Shown here: positions 1-48,900 of the stretch, piece by piece
Layout: each line of letters opens with the position of its first letter
How positions within the stretch are numbered: position 1 is the first letter of the stretch
Source of the DNA: Gracilinanus agilis
Taxonomy: Eukaryota
Assembly (NCBI RefSeq): GCF_016433145.1
Contig: NC_058136.1
Location: 59,665,716 to 59,729,715, forward strand
Reading direction: 5' to 3'
DNA length: 64,000 nt
Notes under the pieces: model-generated
What the model saw: only the letters and a program-made list of their open reading frames with translations
Database searches by the model: none
What the model was told of the DNA's origin: nothing
Made by a program: the position numbers and the translations under genes

Positions 1-3000
1 AAAGGAAGGAAACACACAGACAGATGGGGACACACTGACAAAGGGACACACAGAAATATGTGGGACACACAGACAGATGTGGGACACACAGACAGAAAGG
101 GAGGGGACACACAGATAGAAAGAAGGGGACATACAGACAGATGTGGGACACACAGACAGATGTGGGACACACAGACAGAAAGGAAGAAGACATACAGACA
201 GATGTGGGAAACACAGACAGAAAGAAAAGGCACACACAGACAGATGGGGACACACTAACAAAGGGACACACAGAAATATGTGGGACACACAGAGAGATGT
301 GGGACACACAGACAGAAAGAAAAGGCACACACAGACAGATGGGGACACACTAACAAAGGGACACACAGACAGATGTGGGACACACAGACAGAAAGAAAAG
401 GGACACACAGACAGATGTGGGACACACAGACAGAATGAAAAAGCACACACAGACAGAAAGGAAGGAAACACACAGACAGATGGGGACACACTGACAAAGG
501 GACACACAGAAATATGTGGGACACACAGACAGAAAGAAAAGGGACACACAGACAGAAACAGAGGGAACACACAGACAGATGGGGACACACAGACATATGG
601 GGACACACAGATAGAAAGAAGGGGACATACAGACAGATGTGGGACACACAGACATAAAGAAAAGGGATACACAGACAGGAAGGAAGGAAACACACACAAA
701 TGGGGACACACTGACAATGGGACACACAGCCAGGAAAAAGGGACACACAGACAGATGTGGGATACACAGACAGAAAGAAAAGGCACACACAGAAAGGAAG
801 GAAACACCCAGACAGATGGGGACACACTGACAAAGGGACACACAGAAATATGTGGGACACACAGACAGATGTGGGACACACAGACAGATGTGGGACACAC
901 AGACAGAAAGAAAAGGGACACACAGACAGAAAGAAAAGGGACACACAGACAGATGGGGACACACAGATAGAAAGAAGGGGACATACAGACAGATGTGGGA
1001 CACACAGACAGAAAGGAAGAAGACATACAGACAGATGTGGGAAACACAGACAGAAAGGAAGAAGACATAGTCAGATGTGGAACACACAGACAGAAAGAAA
1101 AGGCACACACAGACAGAAAGGAAGGAAACCCACAGACAGATGGGGACACACTGACAAAGGGACACACAGAAATATGTTGGACACACAGAGAGATGTGGGA
1201 CGCACAGACAGAAAGGGAGGGAACACACAGACAGAAGGGGACACACAGACAGATGTGGGACACACAGACAGAAAGGAAGAAGACATAGACAGATGTGGGA
1301 AACACAGACAGAAAGGAAGAAGACATACAGTCAGATGTGGGACACACAGACAGAAAGGAAGGAAACACACAGACAGATGGGGACACACTGACAAAGGGAC
1401 ACACAGAAATATGTGGGACACACAGACAGATGGGGACACACTGACAAAGGGACACACAGAAATATGTGGGACACACAGACAGATGTGGGACACACAGAGA
1501 GATGTGGGACACACAGACAGAAAGGGAGGGAACACACAGACAGATGGGGACACACAGATAGAAAGAAGGGGACACACAGACAGAAAGGGAGGGAACACAC
1601 AGACAGATGGGGACACACAGATATATGGGGACACACAGACAGAAAAAAGGGACACACAGACAGATGTGGGATACACAGACAGAATGAAAAGGCACACACA
1701 GACCAAAAGGAAGGAAACACACAGACAGATGGGGACACACTGACAAAGGGACACAGAGAAATATGTGGGACACACAGACCGATGTGGGACACACAGATAG
1801 AAAGAAGGGGACATACAGACAGATGTGGGACACACAGACATAAAGTAAAGGGATACACAGACAGGAAGGAAGGAACCACATACACAAATGGGGACACACA
1901 GACAGAAAAAAGGGACACACAGACAGATGTGGGATATACAGACAGAATGAAAAGGCACACACAGACAGAAAGGAAGGAAACACACAGACAGATGGAGACA
2001 CACTGACAAAGGGACACACAGAAATATGTGGGACACACAGACAGATGTGGGACACAGAGACAGAAAGAAAAGGGACACACAGAGAGATGTGGGACACACA
2101 GACAGGAGACACATGGACATATGTGGGACACAGAGACAGAATGGAAGGAGACATACAGACATATGTGGGACACAGACATAAAGGAAAGGTACACACAGAC
2201 AGATGTGGGACACACAGACAGAAAGGAAGGGGACATACAGACAGATGTGGGACACACAGACAGAAAGGAAGGGGACATACAGACAGATGTGGGACACACA
2301 GACAGAAAGGAAGGGGACATACAGACAGATGTGGGACACACAGACAGAAAGGAAGGGGACATACAGACAGATGTGGGACACACAGACAGAAAGGAAGGGG
2401 ACATACAGACAGATGTGGGACACACAGACAGAAAGGAAGGGGACATACAGACAGATGTGGGACACACAGACAGAAAGAAAAGGGACATACAGACAGAAAG
2501 GGAGGAAACACACAGGCAGATGGGGACACACAGGCAGATGGGGACACACAGACAAAAAGGTAGGGGACATTCAGACAGATGTGGGACACACAGACAAAAA
2601 GGTAGGGGACATCCAGACAGATGTGGGACACACAGACAGTAACGAAGGAGACATAGAGACAGATGTGGGACACAGAAAGGAAGGAGATATACACACAGAT
2701 GTAGGACACACAGAGAAAGAAAAGGGACACACAGACAGATGGGGAGATCAGACAGATTTAGGACACACACAGAAAGGAAAGAAAGATACAAAGAGAGATG
2801 TGGACACATAGAAAAGGGACACACAGACAGATGTGGGACAAACAGGCAGATGGGGACACACAGACAAGACACAGACAGACAGATGTGGAATGCACAGACA
2901 GTAAAGTATGATACAGAGAGATGGGGACACAGAGACAAGGGAAACACAGACAGATGCGGGACAGACAGAGATAAAGGAAACGGACAGACAGATGTGGGAC

Positions 3001-6000
3001 ACACGGACAGGTGGGACACACAGAGAGAAAGGAGTGGGACACACAGACAGATGGGGGACACACAGCCAGAAAGAAAAGGGACACAAGACCGAAAGGAAAG
3101 GTAATTACTGGGAGTTGTGGTACACAGAGGCAGAAAAGGTACACACAGACAGAATGAAAGAGACATACAGAGTGAAGTGGGACACACAGACAGATGTGGG
3201 ACAAACAGGCAGAAAGAAAAGGGACACACAGACAGAAATGGAGGAAACACACAGACAGATGGGGACACACAGAAAAGGGACATACAGACAGATGGGGACA
3301 CACAAAAAAGGGACACACAGACAGATGTGGGACCCACAGACAGATGGGGACACACAGAAAAGGGACACACAGACAGATGTGAGACACAGACAGTAAAGAA
3401 GGAGACATACAGACAGATGTGGGACACACAGACAGAAATGAAGGAGACAGATGTGAGACACACAAACAGAAAGAAAAGGGACACACAGACAGAAATGGAG
3501 GAAACACACAGACAGATGGGGACACACATAGCAGAAAGGTATGTGACACACAGACAGATGGGGAGATCAGACAGATTTAGGACACACACAGAAAGGAAAG
3601 AAAGATGCAAAGAGATGCGGACACATAGAAAAGGGACACAAAGACAGATGTGGGACCCACAGACAGAAATGGAAGGAAGATACAGAGATGTGGGACACAC
3701 AGACAGAAAGAAAAGGGACACACAGACCGAAAGGAAAGGTAATTACAGAGAGTCATGGTACACAGAGGCAGAAAGAAAAGGTACACACAGACATAATGAA
3801 AGAGACATACAGAGTGAAGTGGGACACACAGATAGAAAGAAAAGGGACACACAGACAGAAAGGTAAGGGACATACAGACAGATGTGGGACACACGGACAG
3901 ATGGGGGCACACAGAAAAGGGACACACAGACAGATGTGTGACATACAGACAGAAAGGAAAGGGACATACAGACAGATGTGGGACACACAGACAGAAAGAA
4001 TAGGGACACACAGACAAGGGACACACGGACAGGTGAGGTCACATGGAATCAGGAAACACAGATGTGAGACCCAGAGACAGAAATTAAAGGAACATACAGA
4101 CACGTGGGCCACAGAGACAGAAAGAAAAGGGACACACAGACATATGGGGACACACAGACAAGAAACAGAGACAGATATGGGACACACAGACAGAAAGGAA
4201 GAGGACACACAAAGAGATGTTGTACGCACAGACAGAAACTTAAGGGAATTACAAAGAGTTGTGGTACACAAATACAGAAAGAAAAGGGACACACAGACAA
4301 AGGAAAGTGACATACATACAGAAATGGAACACACAGACAGAAAAAAGAGAGACACAGTGATAGATGTGGAACACACAGACAGAAAAGAAGGGACACACAG
4401 ACAGATGTGGGACACAGACTGAAAGGAAAGGGACACGCACACAAATGGGGACACACAGATAAGGGACACACAGACAGATGTGGGACACAGAGAGAAAAGG
4501 GATACACAGACAGATGTCAGACATACAGAGAGAAAGGAAAGGGACACATAGGCAGATGTCAGGTTCACATAGACAGATGAGGACACACAGACAAGGGACA
4601 CAAAGACAGATGTGGGACACACAGACAGATGTGGGACAGACAGAGATGAAGGAAAGGGACATACAGACAGATGTGGGACACGCGGACATATGGGGACAAA
4701 CAGAAAAGGGACAGACAGAGATGAAGGAAAGGGACACATGGACAGATGTGGGACACACAGACAGAAAAAAGGGACACACAGACAGATGGGGACACGCTGA
4801 CAAGGGACATACAGACAGATGTGGGATGCACATACTGACATGTGGGACACACAGACAGAAAGAAAAGGGACACACAGAGAAGGGACACACAGACAGATAG
4901 GAAGGGGACACACAGAAGGAAAGAAAAGGGACCAACAGACAGATAGGAAAGGGACACACAGACAGATGGAGTACACACAGCCAGAAAGAAAAAGGGACAT
5001 ACAGATGTGGAACATAGACAGAAAGGAAAGGGACATACAAACAGATGTAGGGCACACATATCGGGACACACAGAAAGGGGACACACAGTCAGAAAGGAAA
5101 GGGAAACACAGATGTGTGATACACAGACAAAAAGAGAAGGGACACACAGGCAGAAAGGAAAGAAAAACACAGACAGATGAGGCCACAGACAGATGTGGGA
5201 CACACAGACAGATGTGGGATACACAGACAGAAAGAAAAGGCACACACAGACAGATGGCGACACACAGACAGATGTGGGACACACGGAGAGAAAATTGATA
5301 TATGAAAAGACAAAGGACACATAGACACATGGGTGCACATAGAGAGATGAAGACAGAGACGGCGGATACACAGAAAGAAACAGAAGGACAGATAGGGGAC
5401 ACACACAGACAGAAGGCAACAACGAGATGAGGGACACAGACAGGAGAATCACCGGCAGATTGGGGACACACGGACTGACAGACAAGGGACACAAGACCAA
5501 TGGGGACACAAAGACAAATTGGTGAAAACAACCAAGGGACACACAGACTAATGGGGACACAGAGACAATGAACATTTACACAGACAGGGACACAAAGGGA
5601 GACGGGGAGAAAGACAAGAGACGCAGAGACAGATGTGGGATACACAGATGGAAAAGGGACACAGGGACAGATAGACACACAGAGACAAGGGACACACATA
5701 GAGATGTGGGGCACACAGACAGGAAAGGGACACACAGAGATATGAGGAAACACAGACAAGGGACACAAAGATAGATGAAGACACACAGATGGATGTGGGA
5801 CACAGAAATGAAAGGAATACAGATAGATGGGCACACACAGACAGAAAGTAAAGTGACACACAGACATATGGGGACACACGGAGAGAAAATGACACATGGA
5901 CAGACAAAGGACACAGATAAATGGGCATACAAAGAGAGATGGAGACAGAGAGATGGGGGATACATAGAAAGAGACAGAAGGACACACAGGGGACACACAG

Positions 6001-9000
6001 ACAGAAGAGTACACAGAGATGGGGAGAAACAGACTGACAAGGAACACAGAGAAAGATCTCAACCTGCTGACAGATGGGGGACACATAGACAAAGGACACC
6101 TAGACAGGGACACACAGACAGAGGGGAAAGTGACACATGGACTGACAAGGGACACAAAGACAGAGATACACAGACAAGGGACAGACAGGTGTGTGACACA
6201 GAAACAGAAAAGAAAGTGACACATTGACAGACATACAGGGTACACATGGACAGATGGGGACACACAGACAGAAATAAAAAGGACACAGACAGAAAGAAAG
6301 GGGACACAGAGAGAGACAGAGGGAACAGATGGACAGACAGACAGGACACATAGAGAGATGGGGACACACAGACAGAGAGACACGTGACAGACACAGAAAG
6401 AAAAGGGACACACAGACAGATGGGGACACACAGACATGGTACACACAGATGTGGGACATACGGAGAGAAAAGTGACACATGGACAGACAAAGGACACATG
6501 GACAGATGGGCAGACACAGAGAGGTGGAGACGGACAGAGATGGGGGATACACAGAGACAGAAGGACACACAGGGGACACACAGACAGAAGAGTACAAAGA
6601 GATGGGGGAGAGACAGACTGACAGGGGACACACAGAAAGATGGCGACCCGCTGACAGATGGGGGACACATAGACGGGGACACACAGAGGGGAAAGTGACA
6701 CACAGAGACAGGGGACACACAGACAAGGGACAAACAGATATGGGACACAGAAACAGAAAGAAAAGGGACACACTGACAGACCGACAGACAGGGGGATACA
6801 TAGACAGATGAGGACACATAGAAATAAAAGGAACACAAGGACAGAGAGATATGGGACACACAGAAGGAAAATGGACACACGGACAGGCAGACAGGGGACA
6901 CAAAGACAGATGTGAATACACAAAGGACACACAAACAGAAAGGAAAGTGACACACAGACATATGGGGACAAACAAGGGATACACAGAGATGTGGCACACA
7001 TGGTGAGAAGAGTGACACATGGACAGACAAAGCACACACAGATGTGGGACAAACAAAGAAAAGGGAAACACAGACAGATGGGGACACACAAGGGACACAC
7101 AGACAGAAAGGAAAGGGACACACAGACAGATGAGGACACACAAACAAGGGACACAGAGAGATGTGGGACACATGGAGGAAAATTGACACATGGACAGACA
7201 AAGGACACATACACAGATGGTTGCACACGGAGAGATGGAGACAGAAAGAGATGGGAGATACACAGATAGAAAGAGACAGAAGGACAGAAAGGGTATAGAC
7301 AGATAAACAGAAGGTGACAAAGACATGAGGGACACAGAGACAGGAGAAATACAGGCAGATGGGGGACACACAGATTGGCAGACGAGGGACACATAGAACG
7401 ATGGGGACACAGACAGATTGGGGACACACAAACAAGGGACATATAGACAGATGTGGGACACAGACACGAAAAAAGAGACACAAAGACAGTCGGGACACAG
7501 AGAAGGAACACAAAGATAGACGACGGATACACTGATGGAAATGGGACACACAGACAGACAGACGGGATCAAAAGATAGACGAGGACACACAGACATGGGA
7601 CACACAGACGGATATAGGACAGAGAAAGGAAAGGGATACACATATGGGAACACACAGAGAAGGAACACACAGACAAAGAGATGTGGGACACACGGAGAGA
7701 AGAGTGACACGTGGACAGACAAAGGGCACACAGACAGAAAGGAAAGGGGCACACAGAAAAGGGACACACAGACAGATGTGTGGACACAGGGAAGGAAAAA
7801 TGACACATGGAAAGCAAAGGACACATAGATGGGCAGACACAGAGAGGTGGAGACAGAGATGGGGGACACACAGATAGAGACAGAAGGACAGATGGGGACA
7901 CACAGACAGACAGGGACAAAGAGACAGTGGATACAAAGACAGGAGACACACAGATAGACTGACCAATAGGGGACACACAGATAGATGGCGACCCACTGAC
8001 AGATGGGATAAACATAGACAAGGGATGAACAGCAGACAGGGACACACAGAGGGGAAAGTGACACATGGACATACAGGGGACACAAAGACAGACAGGGACA
8101 TACCAACAGGCGACAGACAGATGAGGGACACAGAAATGGAAAGGGACACATTGACAGTCAGAGAGGGGACGCATAGAGAGATGGGGACACACAGACGGAA
8201 ATAAAAGGGACACAAGGACAGAGAGATATGGTACACATAGACAGAGAGATGTGGGGCACAGAGACAGAAAGAAAAGGGACACAAAGAATGATAGGGACAC
8301 ACAGAGAGAACAGGGAAGGAAAATAGACACATGGACAGCAAAGGACACATAGACAGATGGGTGGACACAGAGAGGTGGAGATGGACAGAGATAGGGAATA
8401 CACAGATAGAGACAGAAGGACAAACGGGGGACACACAGACAGACAGAAGAGGACAAAGAGACAGGGGACAGCCAGCCAGCCAGCCAGGCTGACAGGAGAA
8501 ACACAGATGGAGATCCGCTGACAGATGGGGGACAAAGACAACGGACGCATAGAAAAACAGGAACACACAGACAGAGAGAAAAGTGACACACGGACAGAGG
8601 GGACACACAGACAAGGGACAAACATGTGGGACACAGAAACAGAAAGAAAGGGACACTCAGACAGATGGAAACACAAAGATAGATGAGGACACAGACAAGC
8701 GATACACAGAAGAATGTGGGACACAGAAATGAAAGGGACACAGACAGATGGGGACACAGACAAGGGACACACAGACAGAGATATGTGGGACACATGGAGA
8801 GAAAAGTGACACATGGACAGACAAAATACACATAGACACACAAAGAGAGTTGGAGACAGAGAGGTGGGGGATACATAGAAAGAGACAGAAGGACAGTCAG
8901 CAGACACACAGACAGGCAGAAGGCTACAAAGACATGAGGAACAAGGAGACAGGAGACAGACAGACAGATGGGGAACACACAGAAAGACCAACAGGGGACA

Positions 9001-12000
9001 CACAGACACATGGCAACCCACTGACCAATGGGGGACACAAAGACAAGGGATGCATAGACAGACAGGGACACACAGACAGAGGGGAAAGTGACACACACAG
9101 ACAGACAAGGGGCACAAAGACAGACAGGGATGCACAGATGTGGGACACAGAAACAGAAAGATAAGGGACACACTGACAGAAGGTAAAGGGACACACAAAG
9201 AGACAGAGAGGACAGATAGATGGGATACATAGACAGGGACACACAGAGAGATGTGGGACACACAGACAAAAAGAAAGGGGACACAATACAGATGGGGACA
9301 CAGATACAAGGGACACATAGACATATGGGTAGACAAAGACCGAGAGATGTGGGAAACACGGAGAGAAAAATGATACATGGACAAAGGACACATAGACAGA
9401 TGGGCGCACACAGAGAGGTGGTGACAGACAGAGATGGGGATATACAGATAGGAAGAGACAGAAGGACAGACAGGGGACACACAGGCCAATACGGGATATA
9501 CACAGCCACATGGCAACCCACTGACAGATGGGGGACACATAGACAAGGGACACACAGACAAGGACACACAGAGGGGAAAGTGACACACAGACAGGGGACA
9601 CAAAGACAGATGGGGACACACAGACAAGGGACAGTCAGATGTGGGCCACACGAACAGAAAGGAAAGGGACACATTGACAGACAAACAGTGGACACATAGA
9701 CAGATGGCAATACACAGACAGAAATAAAAGGGATACACGGGCAGAGAGATACGGGACAAACAGACCAAAGGAAAAGGGACACACAGAGGGGACAGACAGA
9801 CATATGGAACACATAGATAGATGGAGACACACAGGCAGAGAGATGTGGGACACAGAGAAAGAAAGAAAAGGGACACACAGACAGATAGATGGAACACATA
9901 GACGGAGACACAGACAGAGATGTGGGACACAGAGACAGAAAAAAGGGACACAGAGACAGATGTGGGACACAGAAAAGGGACACACAGAGAGATGTGGAGA
10001 CACGGAAGGAAAAATGACACATGGAAATCAAAGGACACATAGATGGGCAGACACGGAGGTGGAGACAGAGATGGGGGAATACACAGATAGAGAGAAGGAG
10101 AGACAGGGGACACACAGAAGAGGACAAAGAGACGGGGAACAGACAGACTGATGGGACATATAGTGAGACGGTGATAGATAGGGGATGCACAGACAAGGAA
10201 TGCATAGACAGGCAGAGACACTAGACAGAGGGGAAAGTGAAACGTGGACAGACAGGGCACACAAAGACAGAAGGGGACACATAGACAAGGGACAGATAGA
10301 TGTGGGACACAGAAACAGAAACGTGACACATTGACAGACATAGAGGGGACACATAGGCAAGTGGGGACAGATAGAAATTAAAGGGGCACACGGACAGAGA
10401 GATATGGGGCACACAGACAGAAGGAAAAAGGACACACGGATAGACAGACAGGGGACACAAAGACAGATGGGAATACACAGACAAGGGACACACAGAAAGG
10501 AAAGGGACACACAGAAAAGGGACACAGAGACAGAGAAATGTGGGATGCATGGAGAGAAGAGTGGCACATGGACAGAAAAATGACACACAGACAGATGTGG
10601 GACACAGAGAGAAATGATGTGGATACACAGACGTGAGACACAAAGAAGGGAAAGGGACACACAGAGAGATGTTGGACATGCAGAGAGAAGAGTGACACAT
10701 GGACAGAAAAATGACACACAGACAGATGTGGGACACAGACAGATGTGGATACACAGACGTGAGACACAAAGACAGAAGGGAAAGGGACACACAGAAAGTA
10801 AAGGAACACACAGACAGATGGGGACACATAGGCAGAGAGATGTGGGACACATGGAGATAAAAGTGACACATGGACAGACAAAGGACACATAGACAGATGG
10901 CCGCACACAGAGAGGTGGAGACAGACTGAGATGAGGGATACACCGAAAGAGACAGAAGGACAGAAAGGGGAGAGACAGAAAGAAGGGGACAGACAGGAGA
11001 AACACAGGCAGATGTGGGACACATAGACTGATGGGCACATACAGACAGATTGGGGACACACAAACAAGGGACACAGACAGAAAAAAGGGACACACAGACC
11101 AATGAAGACACAGAGACAATGAACACTTACACAGACAGGGACACAAAGATAGATAAGGACACACAGAGGGATGTGAGACACAGGAAGGAAAGGGGCACAA
11201 AGACAGATGGGGACACACAGAGAAGGGAAACACAGAGATGTGGGACACAAAGAGAGAAAACTGACACATGGACAAAGGACGCATAGACAGATGAGCGCAC
11301 ACAGAGAGATGGAGACAGACTGAGATGGGAGATACACAAATAAAAAAGAGAGAAGGACAGACAGAAAGAGACACAGAAACAGGAAGAAAAGGGACACATT
11401 GACAGACAGGGGACACATAGACAGATGGGATCACACAGACAGAAATAAAAGGGTCACAGAGTGATATGGGACACCCAGAAGGAATAGGGATACATAGACA
11501 GAGGGGACAGACAGAAAGATGGGACACATAGATGAGGACACACAGAGTTGGGACACAGAGATGGAAAGAAAAGAGAAACACAGATTGGGGAAACAAAGAA
11601 AAGGGACACAGATGGGGACACACAGACAAGAGACGCATAGACAGACAGGGACACAGATGGTGAGACAGACAAGGGACCCAAAGACAGATATGGGACACAC
11701 AGATGGATAAGAGACACATGGACAGACAGACTGGAGACACTAAGAAGGGGCACACAGACGTGGGACACATAGAAAGGAAGGGGACACAGACACATGGGGA
11801 CACAAATACAAGGGACACACAGAGACATGTGGCACACATGGTGAGAAAAGTGACTCATGGACAAAGGACACATAGACAGATGGGCGCACACAGAGAGTTG
11901 TTGACTGACAGAGATGGGGATACACATATAGAAAGAGAGAGAAGGACAGACAGGGGACACAGACAGAAGGGAACAATGAGATGGTCACAAAGACAGACAG

Positions 12001-15000
12001 ATGGGGACACACAGACAGATGGAAATCCACTGACAGATGGGGGACACATAGACAAGGGATATATAGACAGACAGGGATGCACAGACATAGAGGAAAGTGA
12101 CATGGAAACAGACAGGGGACACAAAGACAGATGGGTACACACAGACTGAAATAAAAGGAACACATGGACAGAGAGATATGGGAAACACAGACAGAAGGAA
12201 AAGGGACACACAGACATAGGGGACAAATGGACAGAGAGGACACATAGACGGGGATACACAGAGAGATGTGGGACACAGACAGAAAGAAAAAGGAAACAGA
12301 GATGTGGGGCACACGGAGAAAAAAGTTACACATGGACAAAGGCTCATGGGTGTACACAGAGAGGTGGAGACAAAGAGATGGGCGATACACAGAAAGAGAC
12401 AGAACAGACGGGATACACAGACAGAAGGTGACAAAGTCATGAGAGACACAGAGACAGCAGAAACATCAGTAGATGGGGACACATTGATAGACAAATAACA
12501 GAGACAAACGGGGACACAGACTAGGGGTACACAAACAAGGGACACATAGATGTGGGACACACAGACAGAAAAAAGGGACAGACAGATGGAAGGAGACAAA
12601 AAGACGGGGGACACAGAGACAGGAGACACAGATAGATGGGAGACATACAGACAGCAGACTGACAGGGGACACGCAAACAGATGGTGGACACAGACAAGGG
12701 ATGCATAGACGGAAACACAGAGGGAAAAGTGACACATGGACAGACAGAGGACACATAGACAGAGCTGTGAGACAGACACACAGACAAATAAAAGGGACAA
12801 ACAGACTGGGGACACCCACAATGAACACATACAAAGACAGGGACACAAAGGCAGACGGTGACAGACAAGGGACATAAAGACAGATGTGGGACACAGAAAG
12901 AAAAGGGACACACAGACAGATGGGGGCACACAGACAAAGGACACATAGAAAGAAAAGGGAGACAGGTTGGGACAGACAAAGGACACATAGATTGGCGCAC
13001 ACTGAGAGGTGGAGACAGAAGTGTGAGAAACAAGGATAGAAAGAGACAGGACAGATAGTGAACACACAGACAGGGACAACGAGACGGGGGACACACAGAA
13101 AAAGAGGGAACACCTAGACAGATGGAGACCCACAGACAGATGGGGGACACACAGACAAGGGAAACACAGATGACAGGGACACACAGACAGGGGATACAAA
13201 AACAGACAGGGACACACAGACAAGAGATACACAGACAGAAATAAAAGGGACACATGGACAGAGATATATAGGACACAGAGAGAAGGAAAAGGGACACACA
13301 CATAGACAGAGGGGTCAGACAGACGGGACACATAGACGGAGATAGAGAGATGTGGGACACAGACAGAAGGAAAAGAGAAACAGATTGGGGACACAGACGG
13401 AAAGGAAAGGGACACACGTACAGACAGAGGGGTCAGACTGACAGATGGGAACACAGACAGATGGGGACACACAGACAGGAAAGGGACACACAGATGGGGA
13501 CACAGAGACAAGGGACACAAGACAGATGTGGGACAGAGAGACAAAAAAGAAAGGGACACACAGATAAGGGACACAGAGAGATGCGGGACACAAGGAAGGA
13601 AAAGTGACACATTGACAATGGACTCAGACAGATGGGCTCACAGAGAAATGGAGACAGAGATGGGAGATACACAGATAAAAAGAGACAGAAGGACAGATAG
13701 GGGACACACAGACAGAAGGGGGCAAAGAGATGGGGGACACAAAGACAGACAAGGACACACAGACAAGGGACAGACAGATGTGGGACACAGAAACAGAAAG
13801 AAAAGAGACACATTGACAGACAAGGGACAGATAGATGGGGACACACAGACAAGGGACAGATAGATGGGGACACACAGACAAGGGATGCATAGACAGACAG
13901 GGATACACAGACATACAGGGGACACAAAGGCATACTGGGACACAGACAAGGGACAGAGTTGTGGGACACAGAAACAGAAAGAAAAGGGACACACAGACAG
14001 ATGACACACAATGAACACATACATAAACAGTGACACGAAGACAGACGGGGAGACAGACAGGGAACACAAAGACAGATGGGGACTCACAGAGAAGGGACAC
14101 AGAGACAGAAAGGAAAGAGACAAAAAGATGGGGACACACGGACAGAAATAAAAGGGACACAGAGAGATGTGGGACACATGGAGAGAAAAGTGATACATGG
14201 ACGAAGGACACATAGACAGATGGGCGCACACAGAGAGGTGGAGACAGAGATGGGGGATGCACAGATAGAGACAGGAGGACAGAAAGGGGACACACAGGAG
14301 ACAGACGGGGGACACAGACGGAAACACAAAGACAGATGTGGGACACATGGACAGAGAGACAGGAGACACATAGATGGGGATACACAAAGAGAAAAGTGAC
14401 GCATGCACAGACGGGGACATATAGACTGATGGGGACACAGAAGTGACACACGGACAGATGGGATACATAAACATGGAACAGAGAGATGTGGGACACACAG
14501 AACACATAGAGGAGGATACACAGACAGAAGGGGACACACAGATGGAAAGAGACAGGACAGACATGGGGACAGACAGGACATGTAGACAGATGGGGGACGT
14601 CCGGATGGAGACAGGACAGGGGACAGAGATGGGGACACATACAGAAAAGAGACACACAGCTGGAAAGAGTCAGAGACAGAGAAAAATGACAAACGGACAG
14701 ACGAGGACACACCGAGAGATGTGGAACACACGGACAGAGGACACATTGGCAGAGGGGGATACACAGACAGATGTGGCACGTGGATAGATAGGGGACACAT
14801 GAGAGGGAAACAGGACAGAGACGGGACACATGGATGGGCCGGAGGCAGGATGACAGACAAGGGACATAGACAGGACAGCCAGGCAGCACACAGAAACATG
14901 AGAGACATTCGGACATTGGACTCCAGGGCAGACGAGGATCGGAGGGATAGACAAAGGGCACAGAGACAGATGGGGACATATGGAGAGGCAACGGAAAGAC
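1..15000. repeat. Large complex tandem array (GACA/ACAC/GGGACAC-rich, T-poor on +), extends beyond window start
   Basis: Recurrent words acagacagatgtgggacacac and gaaaggaagggg throughout. A near-perfect 42-bp unit runs at ~2195-2490 (ORF track shows RQMWDTQTERKGTY about 7 times). A ~600-bp super-unit starts at ~5300. Confidence 0.97.
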
Positions 15001-15264
15001 TAGGGGACACACTGACAAGGGGCAGCCAGATCTGAGCCTGGGGATACATGGGAAGTAGACAAGGTTCCCACAGACGGGAGCCACAAGACCAGGGGCACAC
15101 AGAGACGGAAAAGGGGCCGGCTCAAGGGTTGGTATGCCCGAGGGCATCTCATGGAACAGGCCCTGCCAGTGGCAGTGGGTCTCTTCTTCAGCGTCACTCC
15201 GTGGATCCTTGAACGTCCCCAAGCTGTATCCTTTCCTGCCCTGCTCCCCTCCCGAGAGGGCTAG

Positions 15265-15764
15265 NNNNNNNNNNNNNNNNNNNNNNNNNNNNNNNNNNNN
15301 NNNNNNNNNNNNNNNNNNNNNNNNNNNNNNNNNNNNNNNNNNNNNNNNNNNNNNNNNNNNNNNNNNNNNNNNNNNNNNNNNNNNNNNNNNNNNNNNNNNN
15401 NNNNNNNNNNNNNNNNNNNNNNNNNNNNNNNNNNNNNNNNNNNNNNNNNNNNNNNNNNNNNNNNNNNNNNNNNNNNNNNNNNNNNNNNNNNNNNNNNNNN
15501 NNNNNNNNNNNNNNNNNNNNNNNNNNNNNNNNNNNNNNNNNNNNNNNNNNNNNNNNNNNNNNNNNNNNNNNNNNNNNNNNNNNNNNNNNNNNNNNNNNNN
15601 NNNNNNNNNNNNNNNNNNNNNNNNNNNNNNNNNNNNNNNNNNNNNNNNNNNNNNNNNNNNNNNNNNNNNNNNNNNNNNNNNNNNNNNNNNNNNNNNNNNN
15701 NNNNNNNNNNNNNNNNNNNNNNNNNNNNNNNNNNNNNNNNNNNNNNNNNNNNNNNNNNNNNNNN
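15265..15764. other. Assembly gap (500 N)
   Basis: Run of N. Confidence 1.
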
Positions 15765-15996
15765 AATTCCAGGGGGTACGCTCACCAAAAGGGATCCCCC
15801 AAACTCGGCGCAGACCTACTGGCCATTAGACAGCAACACCGGTGGCAGGTACCCCGGGCCGGCTGGCGCAGCGGTCCTGGTTCTCATCTCAGTGCTCACT
15901 GACACCAAGAGTTCAAGGTGCGGGGCTCCCCAAGGCAGCTGGCCGTTACCTTCCCTCTCGGGATCACGCAGAGTCCCGGTAACCCATCTGCCTTAC

Positions 15997-16100
15997 CTGT
16001 ACAAGGCTCTGGCTATCCGGCGCCGCAGTCTTCGGTGCTGGCACGGGCACTTGCCGCTCCGCTAGCCGGCTCGGAGCCCACACTAAGCAGAGCACGGCTA
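15997..16100 (-). ncRNA. Putative exon 1 of a divergent antisense transcript
   Basis: Near-consensus donor CAG|GTAAGG on - at 15997|15996, plus a second AAG|GTAACG near 15950. No ATG in the exon; lies inside the CpG island. Confidence 0.4.
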
Positions 16101-16379
16101 GCTCTCGGAAACCGATTTTGAAAACTGCCACCGGAGAAAGGGACCCGTCAGTGATTGGTCTTTGGCCAGCCAATCCCTGCGCCAGGCCTCCACAATTCTG
16201 TGACCTCGGTCCAGGCGGAGTCGCTGGGCTTTTTAAAATTGAGCTCAGCAGCCAATGGGAAAGAAGCTTGGACCGCAGGGGGCGTGTCCACGAAGTGTGC
16301 CGGTGTTCGTGACGTCAGGAGGAGGAGAGGCACGGGGGCAGGGGCGGGGGCGGGGGCGGGCGTTATTTAAATAACTCTC

Positions 16380-16482
16380 TCTAGGGCTAGCGCCGCAGTT
16401 CCCAGCTCTCCGGTTGTGTGAGTCCTTCCCTAGGCGTCCCGGCGGCCCTGGGCTACTTCGGCTCCGCGGTGACGTTTGTGCG
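16380..16482 (+). other. CCNB3: Putative non-coding exon 1 of CCNB3
   Basis: Lies downstream of the TATA/CHR-like motif and ends at donor GCG|GTAAGG (16482|16483); no ATG. The TSS position is approximate. Confidence 0.55.
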
Positions 16483-16799
16483 GTAAGGTATCTCAGAATC
16501 CGTTGCTTGCAACTCGCCTGCGGGCAGTTTCTGAGCGGTGGGGTTGGGATACCCCATTCTAAGCCTAGAACACTGCGCTCGCGGAAGGAGTCTGTCTCTT
16601 CCTGGCCTGCCCTTTAAGGTTTTGTATGGAAACCAAAATGTTCCACCCTGGTCCGTTTTAGTATTTGTCCTGGGCCGTCCTCAACTATTATGTGACAGGA
16701 CTCTGGTGCACTTGGCTCTATGTTGCCCATTCTCCATAACTTCGACAGTGAAGGGAGTGGAACATTTTTTATAGAGGTCTCATGTCTAAAATCTAGAGA

Positions 16800-17560
16800 A
16801 CGTCGTCCTATTTATGGGAATAGGAGCCATCCGCCAGTGGAGAAATGGGCAAAAGATAAGAAGAGTTTGGGGGTGAAGACGTCGTAGCCATCTACAGGTA
16901 TATTAACAAATGCTCTAGATTGCAATTAGGAAAATGCAAACCACAACAATTATGAGATAGCTCACAACCTTCAGATTGACTAAAATAATAAGTGGCGGGG
17001 CTGTGGGGAAATGGGGGAACTAAAAAACTCTTAGTGGAACTGTGAACAGATCCAACCATTTCGGAGAGCAATTTGGCATGACACCCCTCAGAGAGCTATA
17101 AAAGACCCAGTGATACTATCACCGCGTCTGTTTCCCTAGGAGATGAGGGGAAAAGGAAAAAGAACCCGGATGTTCTAAAACATTGAGAGTAGCTCTCTGT
17201 GGTGGCAAAGAACTGGAAATTGAAGGGATATCCATCAGTTGGGGAATGGCTGGACAAATGATAGTAGATGACTATGATAAAATGCGACTCATCTTATCTT
17301 GTGCGCATTAATTTTTTTTAAAAAACTCAAAAAGAACTAGGCAGGATAATGATCAGCAAAATGAGTAGAACCAAGATAACATTATATGCTGCTACAGATT
17401 TAATAATTGAAGAATAACTTGTGACTAGCACCTCCCTCCAGGTGATGAACTGCAAAAAGAAACTGGCAGAATTCATTTATATGAATCTGTTTACTAGAAG
17501 GTGGGGGGAGGGGAAGGAGGGGTTAAGACACTTGTAAATAAATTCTATTAATAAAAAAAT
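16800..17560 (+). mobile_element. L1 3' fragment (degraded ORF2 end/3'UTR)
   Basis: Marsupial L1 motifs (gtggaactgtgaacagatccaaccattt, gtggtggcaaagaactggaaattg) and an A-rich tail. Confidence 0.8.
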
Positions 17561-17599
17561 ATATTTTTTAAGGCAGCGAAAAGAGTGGAGGGGACACAG

Positions 17600-21960: not shown

Positions 21961-22079
21961 AATAGAAAGACTCTTCCTAGGGGAAGGGGCCAAACTCTCT
22001 GAGGTTCCCTAATCCCAGCTGGTGCAGCCTGGGTCCCTCTACTCTAGCCCAGACAAAGTGCCAATCTGTGGCCAATATG

Positions 22080-28916: not shown

Positions 28917-28968
<52 letters not shown>

Positions 28969-35480: not shown

Positions 35481-35885
35481 ATTCTCCCTTTGCTCCATTT
35501 TCTATGACTCGATCTGATAAAAAGGAGACAGTTCCTAGATAATATCAGTATGTATTGCTAATGTGAATATTCTTATCCAGTGTCTTCAGAATAATTAAAT
35601 CATCAATCCTGTTTCTGAGGCAGCTGGAAATCTATGCTAGAAAATTTTCCTGGGTTCAGTCTTGAAGACCGTAACTCTGTGTCCACAGGTATGGATTCCT
35701 GGTGTCCAGGGAACATACATTCTTAGGGAAGAGCTGCTGCCTGAGTTCAAGTGACAGACACTAAAAAGACTGATGTCTTTTAGCTCAATGATGACTGTTC
35801 CCAGGGGCCTCCAAAGCTTTTTTTTAAACTGTTTCTCTCTGATCACAACAGGACTGTGGATGAGCAACTGCTGAGTCTGGGGGAG

Positions 35886-36008
35886 ATGCCACTGCCTCGA
35901 AACTCCAAGTGTGCCAACGGGAAGGGGCTCCGATCCAGCAAAACTCAGCCGGTGGAGAATACTAGAGGCGAAATGATAGGTGCTATGGAAAGTCAGGAAG
36001 CAGATAAG
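35886..36008 (+). CDS. CCNB3: CCNB3 coding exon 1 (MPLPRNSK...EADK)
   Basis: Acceptor at 35851|35852, ATG at 35886, phase-0 donor AAG|GTTAGC. Confidence 0.8.
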
Positions 36009-36999: not shown

Positions 37000-39900
37000 G
37001 CTCTCTTATTACAAAAACAATTTAGCAAAAGCCAACACCAACCTAGTGACTGTGCCTGATGGCATATGGACCCATAGTCACCTTTGTGCTGGAAGGGAAG
37101 GAAGTGTTTAATTGTCAGCACCGTGGAATTAGGTATTCCTGGTAACCTGAATTCTGATCATGAAAACATCAATTGTTCTACCTTGGCTTTGTATCAGTCC
37201 ATACCAGTTTCCTCATGTTTCTCTGAATTCCTCTTATTTATCATTTCTGACACTGCAGTGACATTCATTACTTTTCACAGATCACAGTATATTTATCTAC
37301 CTCCCAATCAGTGGCCACTCACTTTTCCCTAAGTTCTTTGTTCTTTCTAAGAATATTCCTATAAATAGTTTGATATATACTAGACCTTTCTGCCATTGAT
37401 CTCCTTGGGGTATGTGGGATCTCTTCATTAAGGGGTTGGGTCTGGGTGTACTTTAATAATAACAATGATAGTAATAATAAAATAATGTTAATAGCTAGCA
37501 TTTATGTAATGCCTACTATGTGCCAGGCAGTGTGCTAAGGGCTCTTTACAAATTTTAGCCCAATATGCTTCACTCTCTGATATACTATTGAGCAACAGCA
37601 TCAAGCTTCATTTACATAGTATCTAGAGGTTTTGTAAAGTATTCTATGTTATCTTATTTGTTTCTTTCCCTGGAAGTGTTAGACCCATTACTTATGCTTT
37701 ACTTCGAATTCTTTCAATAAGATAAATATCCCTGTGGTAGAGCTGTGGGGGATGGGGTGGGGGGTGAATTGGGGAAGGCTCATTCTAGAGCATGGAGGAT
37801 AATCCTAGCACAGCATGTAAAAACTGGTACCAGGACGTTGGAAAAAGGTAAAGAAAACTTAAGTGTGAAACTGCCAAAGGCAATTTTCCCCCTACCCTGA
37901 GTAGGTTTGGAGTAGGTGTTGTCAGATAATGTTGTTAGAGTGCTCTGGGAAATCCTGTGGCCTCTTGGCCAATGACTACCTCCTTTGCAGGGGAGGGGGG
38001 AAGGGAGGAGCTATGCATATTCAGCCCCTTTGTGTCTTAGCATTGTGTTTCCTGTGCCTCTCCTGGGATCCTAAGTTGACCGTGGTTCTCTATAATAACT
38101 GGCCACAGATATTGTCATCCATCTCTTCTTTTCTAATAGGAGGAAAGTAGCCAGGCAAAGAGATCACCATCTTCACCTCAGGGAGCACCTAAAAAACGAT
38201 CAGCGTTTGGAGATCTCACCAATGTGAGTAGTCTGGTTTTGTGGTCAGTGTCTTCTTTCTTTCTTTTAAAAAAACCTGTGTATTGGTTCCAAGGCAGAAG
38301 AGCGGTAAGGGCTAGGCCAACGGTCGGCAACCTTTTTGGCCGTGAGAGCCATAAACGCCTGCGGAAGGAGGAGGATGGAAGGAGAGGATGGAGGGCGCTG
38401 GAATATGGGGTGGGGGTGGAGGGGTGGCTGAAGGGCCCCCTGGGGCACATCCTGGGGCTCTGCCCAGACTGGCCAGTGGGGAGGTGGAGCCAGACATGGC
38501 TCGAGAGCCATACATTGCTGACCCCTGGGCTAGGCAGTGGGGATTGACTGTCCCGGGTCACACTTCTAGGAAGAGTCCGAGATCAGATTTGAATCCAGGA
38601 CTTCCTTTCTCTGGGCCTGGTTCTCAGTCCACTGAGCCACCTAGCTGGTCAATGTCTTCTAACCAAGTGATGGTTGATTGACTCAGACGCCACAAAGCAG
38701 CTGGAATTCACTATCTTTGCAGTCCACCCTATTAGATAGGCCCTTCTCTTGACTACTGGACTTGAACTTTGTACCTAGGCCCTAAGGCTCCACTCCTGTT
38801 TTGAGCTCTGTTAATGGAGTCTTTGTATGTATATGGAGTCAAACTAGGCTAGTGGCTCTGGGTGACCTTTGCTTGGATTTAAGTTTACTGTGCTGTGGAG
38901 GAATGCTTTCCCTAGTGCGCTGACTTCTCGGGTAGAATAGGTAACTGCTGCCTGGATCTCCATCAACATGTCCCCCACTCAGGCCAGTTGATAGAAGTCT
39001 GTGGGTTCATCAGTTAGTGGAATTCCTGGACATCGAACAGCATGTCATCACGAGGCGAGGTTTGCCTGACCCATCTAAGGGCTCGTGAGTTAGGTAGAAC
39101 TACTAAGGTGATCCTGTAACATTTAACGTCTCCCTAGGGCAGGGGTTCTTAAGCTGTGGCTCCATGAAAATATTTGAAAGAAACACTCTGATAATTATAT
39201 TTTAGTAGAATTGAAATCCTTTGTAATCCTCTGAATTTTATGCATTTACAGTCTTTGCCAGACTATTGCCAAAGCAGCCTGTGACACAAACAAGGTGAAT
39301 TCGCCTTGCTTCCTTCAGGGAATGCTCAAAATATAGTTCTTAGGGTACTCGAGCACTCCATAGCTATTGTTGTGGGGGGCTGGAGATTAACCCTTGGTCC
39401 AGGGAGGGTGCCCTTTCTAGAATGACAGACTTGGGTGGAAACCTTTTAAAGACAGATTTATTTAGGTTGAATGGTTGGGAGGAAGCGAGCAGGACCAACT
39501 GCCTCTCTGAACAGAGAAAAGTTCAGGATTTTTATATCTTAAAGGGATGGGGTCTAAGTGACTTGGAAAGGAAAGACGGGGAGGGGGATGATCAATAGGA
39601 ACAAACAAGGAGGGGCAATCAAGGGAGAATAGGTAACAGAATATAGGTGTCTTTAGGTCTGGGGGTTTAAGCATAAGCATACATCCTTTATGACATCCTG
39701 TTCTTAAAGGTGGGGCTGGGGGCATGGGACAGGTATACATCCTTTATGACATCCTGATCATAAAGGTGGGTAAGTTATCCATCTTGAAAAACCTAGTAAT
39801 GTTTGAGGTCCTACGTGATGTTTGACATGTAGGGATCAAAAAGGCCTGGAGAAACCTAACGTGTTTGGGATGTTAACAAGAGGTATCTTCTCATGCTCAG

Positions 39901-45900: not shown

Positions 45901-48900
45901 ATGTCTCTGTTCAAAAATGCAGAATCAAATAGAAAATCCTCTGTTTGGCCCCTTCTAGTCTTGCCAGTCTTCTCTTGCCATGTGCTCCCTTTCACATACT
46001 TTGTGACCTAGTCACACTGGCCTTCTAGATGGGCCTCCTCCAACTTGGAGCATTTTCTCTGCTTGTCTCACATGCTGAGATTTTTCTCCTTCTTCATCTT
46101 TGCCTCCTGGCTTCCTTCAACTCACAGCTGAAGTCCCACCTTCTGCAGGAAGCCTCCTCTTCTCCTTCTTGACCTTGGTGTCTTTCCTCTAAGAGCATCT
46201 CTAGTATCCCGTCTGATCTTGCTTTTTGTACACGGTTGTTTGCATGTTGTCTTCTCCATTAGAAGGTGGACTCTTCGAGAGCACTGACCATGTTTGTGCC
46301 TTTCTTCTTATCCCCATTCTTGGCATGGGAACTAGCACAAAGTATGTTCCTGAACATGTCAACTAACATTTATTATCAGCTCTGAGTTTTCTTTTTGTCT
46401 CTCCCACTGGAACAGATGGATCTTGGCTATGCCTCCAACTGTAGTTTTGGCAAAGAGGAGAGAATGATCTCTCAATCTTCTCTTTTCAGAAATAACTGAG
46501 GATAGCCCAGAGCCAAAGAGGCTGGTATGTGGAAGTTTCCATTGTTGGTCTACTTCAACCTAGCCTACACTGGCACAGTTGGGCAGGGGCTTGGGGCCTT
46601 GGGCTTCTTTGGTTTCACGGGTCCTTTAGTGGAGATATCTTGCCTTGGAAATTATATTTTCATAAAGTGTCATCCCCTGCTCTCCTACCATTTGATATTC
46701 TATACATACCATGTTCTAAATATAAAAGTGTCCCTTTCCCATGAAGACCTGGGCCAAAGATCCAAGGACCCTTTCAGGTCACCTGGATCCAGGAAGGAAG
46801 AGGGAGGAGGTGGTAGCTATGTGATGTGTCTGCTCTTTGGTCATGAAAGATCTATTCACCTTTGTTCTTCTTAATCATCAGGAGACCTTCCCAGTCTCAA
46901 ACTACATGGTCAAGCAGCATGATATCAGCAAGGATATGAGAGCCATCCTGGTGGACTGGATGGTGGAGGTGCAGGTGAGTCTGGCAGCTTCTGGCAGGGA
47001 TACTTGTGGTAAGATGAAGTTTCAAAGAGAGCAGCCACATGGAGAGTTGTTCCTCTGTGTCCATCTTAGGAGGAACAGGTGAGTAGCAGGACTGGCCCAT
47101 TCCTGTTATATCTATATTCTCTCCTATACCCTATAAAACCTATCCTCAGCAGCTTCCTTTAAAGGGTCCCTTCTTCACAAAAATGTCAGATTGGAGATTT
47201 ATGGGATGACTCCAAGAAGATTTACAGTTCAGTAGGAAAGGACGTTTGGGGGCCTGGGTCTTTCTCAAGCTCCTGAAATCTATCTCTTCCACTCAGTGAG
47301 CTTTGTGTAGGGAAGGTAGCATGGTGGTTTGATAGATTTAAAGAATAACCCATTATTTCAGTGAAAGTTTCTGCTTTCTCATAAATTCTCATTTGATCTT
47401 AGACAATTCTGAAGTAGAGAACATAGTAGTTATCGCCATTATGGATTACAAAATTAAGACTTAAAGACTGACTTGCCCAAGGTCATACAGAAAAAGACAG
47501 AACTGAGATTACCTGGGTCTTTTGATAACCACAGTGATATATGCTTCCTTGACTCTGTAAAATGTCTTCTTCAGATTATTCCTCTAGTGCTATCTTTCTC
47601 TGTTGCCTCATTGTGGCACAAAGATGACCCTGAGTTCTTAAGTCTATGGCAGATCTTCTCAAGCTGGGCCCATTGACAGACCATCCAGTTTCCCAAGAAC
47701 TAGCCTAAATTCAGAGAGGCTTATTACTAGATTGGTTGTAGGATAACAGGTTTTTGGCCATAGCAATTCTTTTGTGGTGTAGAGAACAAGTTCTACCTTT
47801 GGGGGACTTAAAATCTAATTAGAGATAAGTAAGGAACAGAAAAATTAAATAACAAGGCGACCTGAAATTGTGGAATTGGGGTGGGTATGTGTGTGGAGTC
47901 CTTGTGGCCTGGGGTGATTGGACAAGCTTTATTGAAGAGGCAAGACTGAAGGAGAAAGAACAGCCTCAATAGAAGTGTAATAATGTGGCCTGCCGGAATC
48001 CTGGCTGTAAACTTTGGTCATGGTCACGTTTCCATCCATGATGTAATTGCCTGGTCCAACCACAGAAGCTGGCAAGCTTCAGGGCGAAGGAATGGAAGTT
48101 GGACTGGGTCCCTGCAGGGAGCCTCCTGGGGAAAGGGCTGCCTGTTTCTGCTCATTTTCTCAGGTTTTGTCTCAATGCTTTTCTATTAAAGAACTGTAGG
48201 TCTGCCTTATTTCTAACTTGTAGCCCTGCCCTCTGGGTCTTCTCGGTCATATACCTCGAGTGTGTGTATGCCAACTGATAGCATAACCCTAAAGCCACTG
48301 GAAGCCAAGAGAAACGTTTTTTGGCTTTGATATGGGACGTTCTTTCTCTTTTCTCAGGAGAACTTTGAGTTGACCCACGAGACTCTGTATTTGGCAGTGA
48401 AGTTGGTGGATCACTACTTAATGCATGTGGTGTGCATGAGGGACAAGTTACAACTGATTGGATCCACTGCTATCCTGATTGCATCTAAATTTGAGGTGAG
48501 TCCCTGGGTCTGACCCTAGAACTTTGTGAGAAGCAATCATCTATCTGAACAGGAGGAGGGAGGCCTGAATGCCTTCTCTAACCCCACCAAACTTCGTATC
48601 CGCCTTGCCCAGGCAGAGAGCCTAATGCTGAACTGCTCTAACAGAGTAGAACACAATTGGGATTTTAGCCATTTCCTGGGCATCCCCAACATCCTCCCTT
48701 TAAAGCTCCCTTCTAGGGGGTGTTGTGGGGGTGGGGGCTTTGTATGAACAATAGGATGTTGTAGTAGCCAATGCAGGCTAGCTGCCATCTCATGTCTGTT
48801 CCCACATAGGACATCAGGGAGCTTTACTAGGATCAGGGGAAATACTCAAGACTTTTCTCTCTTTGCCTCTTGTTAACAGGGATTTGAAATAATATAGCAT

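What the first reader, a model, noticed from the sequence alone, without database searches (positions are those of the whole stretch)
1..16100. Candidate divergent, spliced, repeat-rich lncRNA: CpG promoter to a >15-kb UG/UC-rich exon
Seen: the CpG island has a near-consensus minus-strand donor (CAG|GTAAGG, 15997|15996). At the array edge there is a long pyrimidine tract ending in TATCCCCAG|G (15038|15037), after which the minus strand enters the array directly. That strand would be RNA made of UCUGUCUGUGUGUCCC units. Established: the marsupial X-inactivation RNA Rsx and eutherian Xist are large tandem-repeat lncRNAs, and UG- and UC-rich repeats bind TDP-43/CELF and PTBP1. Rsx lies near PHF6/HPRT1, so this locus is not Rsx. 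Inference: this may be a second, undescribed repeat-scaffold lncRNA on the marsupial X, co-regulated with CCNB3 through a shared promoter. Caveats: a 500-N gap lies in the proposed intron, and acceptor-like sites are common in pyrimidine-rich DNA.
Basis: partly seen in the sequence, partly recalled or inferred. Interest (0 to 1): 0.75.

Follow-up and report, generated by a model that had tools for sequence, protein, structure and literature searches.

The report
Repeat array beside cyclin B3 promoter
A real 15-kb-plus degenerate repeat array sits next to the CpG-island promoter of an opossum cyclin B3 gene, and a strong backward-pointing splice donor suggests a second transcript starts there. 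No test I could run shows the array is part of any RNA, so the proposed Rsx-like long non-coding RNA remains an untested idea.

Summary
A strand-asymmetric, degenerate minisatellite runs from the window start to about 15037. The minus-strand donor CAG|GTAAGG is at 15997|15996 and the AG at 15038 is present. The window's only CpG island follows a 500-N gap.

The donor is better than chance: about 0.02 sites this good are expected in the roughly 400 nt beside the island. The acceptor is not unusual, at 1.3 equally good sites per kb elsewhere. The lack of poly(A) signals, donors and stop codons on the minus strand follows from base composition.

The plus-strand gene is a cyclin with a destruction box and a Cyclin_N exon, consistent with cyclin B3.

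No RNA test was possible. Continuity across the gap is untested, although the array's GC/CpG-rich flank suggests the gap lies inside the island.

My best reading is a probable divergent non-coding first exon, with the array as intronic or intergenic DNA. I put the 15-kb repeat exon at about 8%. The scan noted a different repeat-rich lncRNA candidate on another piece of this genome (s1-184997), but not this array.

The parts
1..15037 (.). Degenerate, strand-asymmetric minisatellite. The + strand is purine-rich with 15/19/23-nt units of the GGGACACACAGACAGA(TGTGGG / AAGAAAA) type. It is cut by the window start and is more homogeneous toward position 1.
   Evidence: TRF; composition and k-mers; unit spacings and block similarity; CpG o/e 0.06-0.21, the same as bulk DNA.
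15030..15046 (-). Candidate acceptor TATCCCCAG|G (15038|15037). It is the first good AG after the gap on the minus strand.
   Evidence: Read. Score 5.2 in a rough matrix; 1.26 equally good sites per kb elsewhere.
15038..15264 (.). Unique GC/CpG-rich flank between the array and the gap. It looks like a CpG-island shore.
   Evidence: GC 0.60 with 8 CpG. Only 3 of 2252 windows of the same size in 17800-64000 are as rich.
15265..15764 (.). Assembly gap of exactly 500 N. It was neither filled nor looked up. Continuity is untested.
15765..16600 (.). CpG island and promoter region: CCAAT at 16170 and 16252, inverted CCAAT at 16154, TTTGAA at 16117, CRE TGACGTCA at 16310-16317, GC boxes, and the palindromic TATTTAAATA at 16364-16373.
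   Evidence: Sequence; CpG statistics.
15990..15999 (-). Near-consensus minus-strand donor CAG|GTAAGG (15997|15996). It probably ends a short non-coding first exon that starts somewhere in 16100-16300.
   Evidence: 11.5 bits; 0.056 per kb background. No ATG on the minus strand in 16300-15997.
16395..16482 (+). Probable non-coding first exon of the cyclin gene. The start is inferred from the TATA box. The donor is GCG|GTAAGG, with the exon ending at 16482.
   Evidence: 8.2 bits.
35852..36008 (+). Cyclin start-codon exon, with ATG at 35886 followed by 41 codons to the donor.
   Evidence: Read.
38113..38223 (+). Destruction-box exon (…KKRSAFGDLTN). The exon start is approximate.
46873..46974 (+). 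First cyclin-box exon (…DMRAILVDWMVEVQ).
   Evidence: Pfam Cyclin_N E 3.4e-7, 30.5 bits against a cut-off of 23; cyclin A2 and B1 chains.

Best explanation
The first 15 kb of the window is an old, decayed minisatellite. Inferred: it grew by slippage and unequal exchange from AC/AG/ACAG-type simple sequence. Its young, more regular core lies beyond the window start.

The array ends 227 nt before an assembly gap. That gap most likely lies inside the CpG island of a cyclin B3 gene.

The island probably fires in both directions. The near-consensus minus-strand donor at 15997|15996 most likely ends a short non-coding first exon of a divergent transcript. That transcript could be a promoter-associated lncRNA, or a 5' exon of the upstream minus-strand gene. 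In placentals the upstream neighbour is AKAP4.

The array is then most likely first-intron or intergenic DNA that this transcript reads through or skips, not a 15-kb exon.

Shown: the array, the signals, the cyclin gene, and the statistics of the signals. Inferred: the divergent transcript, its exon 1, adjacency across the gap, and the array's non-exonic status.
For: - The array is real and degenerate. Its CpG depletion matches bulk DNA.
- The donor is rare by chance: 7 sites as good in 126 kb.
- The flank at 15038-15264 is as GC/CpG-rich as an island shore, matched by 0.13% of background windows. The island therefore extends more than 1.3 kb upstream of the cyclin transcription start but only about 200 nt downstream of it. 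That asymmetry fits a second start on the other strand.
- The putative exon 1 has no ATG.
- CCAAT boxes occur in both orientations.
- No minus-strand donor of 7 bits or more and no AATAAA/ATTAAA lies in 1-15264. An acceptor at 15038 would therefore have no partner signal for exon definition within 15 kb (established knowledge of vertebrate exon definition).
- Long first introns are common; the mean intron in this genome's annotation is 8.4 kb (PMC8390783). Exons longer than 15 kb are extremely rare.
- No RNA run holds the array.
Against: - No RNA data of any kind were examined, so neither the divergent exon nor the array's intronic status is shown.
- The acceptor at 15038 is the first good AG after the gap and could be used.
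- Rsx shows that a 13-kb repeat domain can be exonic (PMC6633197).
- The gap could hide other exons or signals.
- If the two 500-N gaps are Hi-C joins, the 17.6-kb piece carrying the promoter could be misplaced or inverted.
- The placental neighbour AKAP4 and its orientation rest on a gene list in PMC11640446 and my memory. I saw nothing about this in the opossum.
Confidence: 0.5

Rival explanations
1. A divergent lncRNA starts in the island, splices from 15997 to 15037, and carries the array as a UG/UC-rich exon of more than 15 kb that scaffolds RNA-binding proteins.
For: - The donor is stronger than chance.
- The first good acceptor after the gap sits exactly at the array edge.
- There are no poly(A) hexamers and no good donors on the minus strand for 15 kb, so a polymerase that entered would meet no processing signal.
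- UGUGU occurs at 54 per kb and YUCUYY/YYUCUY at 31 per kb, against 1.6 and 10 per kb elsewhere.
- There is precedent for 13-kb exonic repeat domains in Rsx (PMC6633197).
- Another repeat-rich lncRNA candidate was noted in this genome (s1-184997; I did not check it).
Against: - There is no RNA evidence.
- The acceptor is ordinary at 1.26 per kb.
- The absence of poly(A) signals, donors and stops follows from 7.7% T on the + strand. From the base frequencies, about 0.02 TTTATT are expected.
- (UG) runs are at most 8 nt, below the (UG)6 usually cited for strong TDP-43 binding (the threshold is from my own knowledge).
- PTBP1 motif density is several-fold below PNCTR's 2,178 motifs in a transcript of more than 10 kb.
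- The array is decayed to about 65% unit identity and is CpG-depleted like bulk DNA.
- Absence of poly(A) signals does not by itself extend antisense transcription (PMC11230626).
Confidence: 0.08
2. Nothing stable is made on the minus strand. The donor is a chance match in GC-rich DNA, and the array is an inert intergenic minisatellite upstream of cyclin B3.
For: - Antisense transcription from most promoters terminates quickly (PMC11230626).
- No RNA holder was found.
- No paper mentions a transcript here or these repeat motifs.
- Rfam has no match in 1-17600.
Against: - Chance expectation for a donor this good is about 0.02.
- The island is skewed to the antisense side.
Confidence: 0.3
3. A scaffolding artefact. 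The array piece or the 17.6-kb promoter piece (15765-33399) is misplaced or inverted. If inverted, the strong donor would be the cyclin gene's own exon-1 donor, about 3 kb upstream of the start-codon exon, and the array would not touch the promoter.
For: - There are two gaps of exactly 500 N, 17.6 kb apart.
- The genome paper describes short-read stLFR contigs joined with 3D-DNA Hi-C scaffolding (PMC8390783). That 3D-DNA writes 500-N joins and that small pieces are often mis-oriented is from my own knowledge.
- The minus donor (11.5 bits) is stronger than the plus donor (8.2 bits).
- The TATA element is a perfect palindrome.
Against: - The array's flank is island-like and matches the island shore on the other side of the gap. 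The other end of the piece (GC 0.555, o/e 0.29) and the CT-rich array after gap 2 do not match it.
- In the present orientation the plus-strand exon 1 agrees with the downstream cyclin exons.
Confidence: 0.1

Closest known systems
Rsx (marsupial) and Xist (placental) X-inactivation lncRNAs
   Same: Both involve very long tandem-repeat domains. Rsx Repeat 1 is 13 kb, and nearly all of Rsx is repeat (PMC6633197). The transcript proposed here would also be long, nuclear and start at a CpG island.
   Different: - No expression, sex bias or chromosome coating is shown here.
- The unit here is UG/UC-rich with CCC ends, not the G/C-run-rich type described for Rsx Repeat 1.
- From my own knowledge, the huge repeat exon of Xist and Rsx is the first exon, whereas here it would follow an intron.
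- The locus lies beside a cyclin B3 gene, not at the Rsx site.
PNCTR and other short-tandem-repeat-enriched RNAs that sponge RNA-binding proteins
   Same: If transcribed, this would also be a pyrimidine-rich repeat RNA of more than 10 kb with many YUCUYY/YYUCUY motifs.
   Different: - PNCTR is a Pol I product of the rDNA spacer with 2,178 such motifs (PMC6224606).
- Here there are about 31 per kb, roughly 465 in 15 kb.
- The array sits next to a Pol II CpG island.
- No transcript is shown.
Divergent (bidirectional-promoter) lncRNAs and upstream antisense RNAs
   Same: There is a shared CpG island, a 5' splice site close to the presumed antisense start, and no poly(A) hexamer downstream. This layout is thought to favour a stable divergent transcript.
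   Different: The signals are only predicted. The lack of poly(A) signals is compositional, and Integrator can end antisense transcription without a poly(A) signal (PMC11230626).
Ordinary minisatellite or cryptically simple arrays
   Same: Head-to-tail units of 15-23 nt with about 65% identity, variable unit length, strand asymmetry, and a more regular core with decayed edges.
   Different: It is unusually long (more than 15 kb), and it abuts a promoter island with an antisense donor.

Membership tests
Xist/Rsx-type repeat-scaffold lncRNA | A long, spliced, polyadenylated nuclear transcript exists. | not testable with these tools
Xist/Rsx-type repeat-scaffold lncRNA | Tandem-repeat domains make up the exon body. 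| tested here: inconclusive
   The DNA array is real, but its exon status is unknown. The acceptor is ordinary, and no exon-defining signal follows it.
Xist/Rsx-type repeat-scaffold lncRNA | Expression from the inactive X in females, coating the chromosome. | not testable with these tools
   The only RNA-seq reported for the presumed species comes from male kidney, muscle and liver (PMC8390783).
PNCTR-type PTBP1 sponge RNA | Extreme density of YUCUYY/YYUCUY motifs (2,178 in a transcript of more than 10 kb). | tested here: not met
   31 per kb on the minus strand against 10 per kb background. This is several-fold below PNCTR.
PNCTR-type PTBP1 sponge RNA | Encoded in the rDNA intergenic spacer and made by Pol I. 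| tested here: not met
   No rRNA or any Rfam family in 1-17600. The neighbour is a Pol II cyclin gene.
TDP-43-binding (UG)n RNA | Uninterrupted UG runs of about 6 repeats or more. | tested here: not met
   The longest TG run is 8 nt, and none reaches 12 nt. The threshold is from my own knowledge.
Divergent promoter lncRNA or bidirectional gene pair | A shared CpG island with an antisense 5' splice site near the start and no early poly(A) signal. | tested here: met
   Donor at 11.5 bits with 0.056 per kb background. No AATAAA/ATTAAA on the minus strand of 1-16100. The island is skewed to the antisense side. This holds at sequence level only.
Divergent promoter lncRNA or bidirectional gene pair | The antisense transcript is observed. 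| not testable with these tools
Minisatellite array | Head-to-tail units of about 10-100 nt with unit variation. | tested here: met
   TRF periods of 15-42 at 60-69% match. Anchor spacings of 19, 23 and 15 nt.
Protein-coding gene on the minus strand of the array | An open frame with family membership or a periodic coding pattern. | tested here: not met
   ORFs of up to 2150 aa exist. They have no Pfam match and are absent from the protein collection. Unit lengths of 19 and 23 nt are not multiples of 3. The open frames follow from the scarcity of A on that strand.
Cyclin B3 (the plus-strand neighbour) | A destruction box plus a cyclin box. | tested here: met
   RSAFGDLTN at 38197. Cyclin_N E 3.4e-7. 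PDB cyclin A2 and B1 chains. The B3 subtype rests on my memory of the human protein and on gene order, not on a tool.

The most novel reading that the evidence does not exclude
The cyclin B3 CpG island drives a divergent, spliced transcript whose body is the pyrimidine-rich array of more than 15 kb. This would be a second giant repeat-scaffold nuclear RNA on the marsupial X, co-expressed with a meiotic cyclin, possibly binding CELF-, PTBP- or PCBP-type proteins in germ cells.
Probability: 0.08. Interest if true: 0.75.

Novelty: new member of a known kind. Interest (0 to 1): 0.3.

Why it matters
If the array were truly a 15-kb exon, marsupials would have a second giant repeat RNA besides Rsx, tied to a meiotic cyclin promoter. 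That would bear on how repeat-scaffold RNAs arise.

On present evidence it is a long minisatellite next to a probably bidirectional promoter, which is a common arrangement.

The useful results are:
- a specific junction to test (15997 to 15037);
- a likely divergent first exon;
- a warning that two scaffolding gaps flank the promoter piece.

Tried and rejected
- RNA evidence:
  - The look-up of sequencing runs on window:5300-15264 gave one holder of unknown kind and no RNA run.
The Rfam scan stopped at 17600, and my pattern counts skipped 17691-17800.
- Exact look-up of ten array ORFs in the protein collection found none.
- Rfam at gathering threshold on 1-17600 found nothing.
- Coding reading of the giant minus-strand ORFs: rejected.
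- Same repeat family elsewhere in the window: rejected. The CT-rich array at 33900-35460 is unrelated, and array motifs are almost absent elsewhere.
- Overlap of the contig ends across the gap: none found.
- Literature: no paper links CCNB3 with an opossum lncRNA, and none holds the repeat motifs.
- Earlier notes for the neighbouring DNA: none were reachable.
- I did not run the large protein search. The question is not about a protein, and the translated repeat is low-complexity.
Exons were searched singly, by reference.
- I did not fill or look up the N stretches.
Full report
**Observation**

- The reverse complement of 15990-15999 reads CAG|GTAAGG, with the exon ending at 15997.
- The reverse complement of 15037-15046 reads TATCCCCAG|G, with the AG ending at 15038.

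From position 1 to about 15037 the + strand is 44% A, 31% G, 17.5% C and only 7.7% T. Tandem Repeats Finder reports overlapping periods of 15, 19, 23 and 42 at 60-69% match. The spacing of the GGACA anchor peaks at 19, 23 and 15 nt. On the minus strand the commonest octamers are TGTGTCCC (311 times), TCTGTGTG and CTGTCTGT, so the proposed RNA unit is right.

The first two kilobases hold far fewer distinct 14-mers than the rest (392 and 480 per kb against about 900). They also share many 14-mers with each other. The young core of the array therefore lies at or beyond the window start, and the promoter-side edge is the decayed end. CpG depletion inside the array (o/e 0.06-0.21) matches bulk DNA.

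**The neighbourhood**

The window has one CpG island, at 16001-16500 (GC 0.62, o/e 0.84). It carries:
- CCAAT boxes in both orientations
- a TTTGAA element
- a CRE
- GC boxes
- a perfectly palindromic TATTTAAATA at 16364-16373
- a plus-strand donor GCG|GTAAGG with the exon ending at 16482

Downstream on the + strand are three exons:
- a start-codon exon at 35852-36008
- a destruction-box exon ending in KKRSAFGDLTN
- an exon at 46873-46974 that matches Pfam Cyclin_N above its cut-off (E 3.4e-7) and solved cyclin A2 and B1 chains

The gene is a cyclin with a D-box. Calling it B3 rests on my memory of the human protein and on the placental gene order AKAP4, CCNB3, DGKK, SHROOM4, as listed in PMC11640446.

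**Is it more than chance?**

I used rough donor and acceptor matrices built from textbook frequencies.
- **Donor:** it scores 11.5 bits, and only seven sites on both strands of the whole window score as high (0.056 per kb). About 0.02 are expected in the ~400 readable bases beside the island.
- **Acceptor:** it is the first good AG after the gap. But acceptors as good occur at 1.26 per kb on the rest of the minus strand, and 81 minus-strand AGs lie in 1-15264, most behind long pyrimidine tracts.
- **Processing signals in the array:** no minus-strand donor of 7 bits or more lies in 1-15264, and no AATAAA or ATTAAA lies on the minus strand of 1-16100, against 0.9 per kb elsewhere. This is a by-product of composition. 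With 7.7% T on the + strand, about 0.02 TTTATT are expected in 15 kb.
- **Giant minus-strand ORFs:** the same scarcity of A on the minus strand explains ORFs of up to 2150 codons. They have no Pfam match, are not in the protein collection, and sit on units whose lengths are not multiples of three.

**The gap**

The scan asked for this test first, and I could not do it directly. I neither filled nor looked up the Ns.

There is indirect evidence. The 227 bases between the array edge and the gap have GC 0.60 and 8 CpGs. Only 3 of 2252 equally long windows in 17800-64000 are as rich. The 227 bases on the far side of the gap have GC 0.62 and 13 CpGs. The simplest reading is that the gap lies inside one island spanning roughly 15040-16600.

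The contig ends do not overlap.

Earlier notes of this scan name the species as the agile gracile opossum (s1-153908, s1-153830); I did not verify this. Its genome paper (PMC8390783) describes:
- 100-base stLFR reads
- Supernova contigs with N50 of 57 kb
- 3D-DNA Hi-C scaffolding
- a male animal
- RNA-seq from kidney, muscle and liver of two males only

From my own knowledge, exact 500-N gaps are the 3D-DNA join convention. The promoter sits on a 17.6-kb piece between two such gaps, so misplacement or inversion is a real, if minority, possibility.

**RNA evidence**

There is none. The run search on 10 kb of the array returned one holder of unknown kind with 68% of the words, probably source DNA, and no RNA run. 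Given the tissues listed above, this says nothing about gonads or females. No paper links CCNB3 with an opossum lncRNA or prints these repeat motifs. Rfam has no match in 1-17600.

**What it most likely is**

Several features make a spliced divergent transcript about as likely as not (my estimate is 55-60%):
- The donor is too good and too well placed to dismiss.
- The island extends more than 1.3 kb upstream of the cyclin start but only about 200 nt downstream of it.
- CCAAT boxes face both ways.
- The 300 nt upstream of the donor hold no ATG.

Whether the array is its exon is a separate question, and there the odds are poor:
- Vertebrate exons are recognised through a downstream donor or poly(A) site, and none exists for 15 kb.
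- The acceptor is ordinary.
- First introns of this size are common, while exons of this size are a handful per genome.

The array is therefore most likely first-intron or intergenic DNA. The later exons, of a lncRNA or of the upstream minus-strand gene, would lie beyond the window. Lack of poly(A) signals does not by itself promise elongation, because Integrator ends most antisense transcription (PMC11230626).

**The proposed protein binding**

- UGUGU is very dense at 54 per kb, but UG runs never exceed 8 nt. That is below the roughly six repeats usually cited for strong TDP-43 binding (my own knowledge).
- YUCUYY/YYUCUY motifs reach 31 per kb, three times background. That is several-fold below PNCTR's 2,178 motifs in a transcript of more than 10 kb (PMC6224606).
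- CCC runs are twice background.

A multivalent RNA is conceivable, but its motif content is moderate.

**Comparison and novelty**

The closest functional analogues would be Rsx, whose Repeat 1 is 13 kb and which is nearly all repeat (PMC6633197), and PNCTR. Membership in either class cannot be claimed. The defining RNA-level features are untestable here, and the PNCTR and TDP-43 sequence criteria are not met.

What can be filed is a long minisatellite beside a probably bidirectional CpG-island promoter. The scan noted a different repeat-rich lncRNA candidate on another piece of this genome (s1-184997), but not this array.

**Verdict**

| Question | Verdict |
|---|---|
| Observation | confirmed |
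| Interpretation | cannot tell; about 8% for the full model |
| Interest | 0.3 |

I did not build a joined spliced model. Exons were handled singly, by reference.

Noticed in passing
window 35852-36008, ~38113-38223, 46873-46974: The cyclin B3 gene here is compact. The D-box exon and the first cyclin-box exon lie 8.7 kb apart, with no plus-strand ORF above 133 aa between them. The giant central exon known from placental cyclin B3 (my own knowledge) therefore seems absent in this marsupial.
   Followed up: partly
window 33900-35460: A second, unrelated CT-rich tandem array (units of about 29-85 nt of the CCATTTTTACCTCAGCT type) starts directly after the second 500-N gap, inside cyclin intron 1.
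   Followed up: partly
window 15265-15764 and 33400-33899: Two gaps of exactly 500 N bracket a 17.6-kb piece that carries the promoter. They are probably Hi-C scaffolding joins, so the order and orientation of this piece rest on weak evidence.
   Followed up: partly
window 16110-16375: The promoter grammar is typical of cell-cycle and germline genes: TTTGAA (CHR-like) at 16117, inverted CCAAT at 16154, CCAAT at 16170 and 16252, CRE TGACGTCA at 16310-16317, GC boxes, and a perfectly palindromic TATTTAAATA at 16364-16373 that could serve either strand.
   Followed up: no
window 35860-35874: A four-codon upstream ORF (ATGAGCAACTGCTGA) sits 12 nt before the cyclin start codon, in the same exon.
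   Followed up: no
I worked beside them and sent none of their letters to any search tool.
   Followed up: no
window 19699: A single isolated N.
   Followed up: no
window 28900-29000: A (TG)n microsatellite, seen as a VCVCVCVC run in an ORF translation.
   Followed up: no
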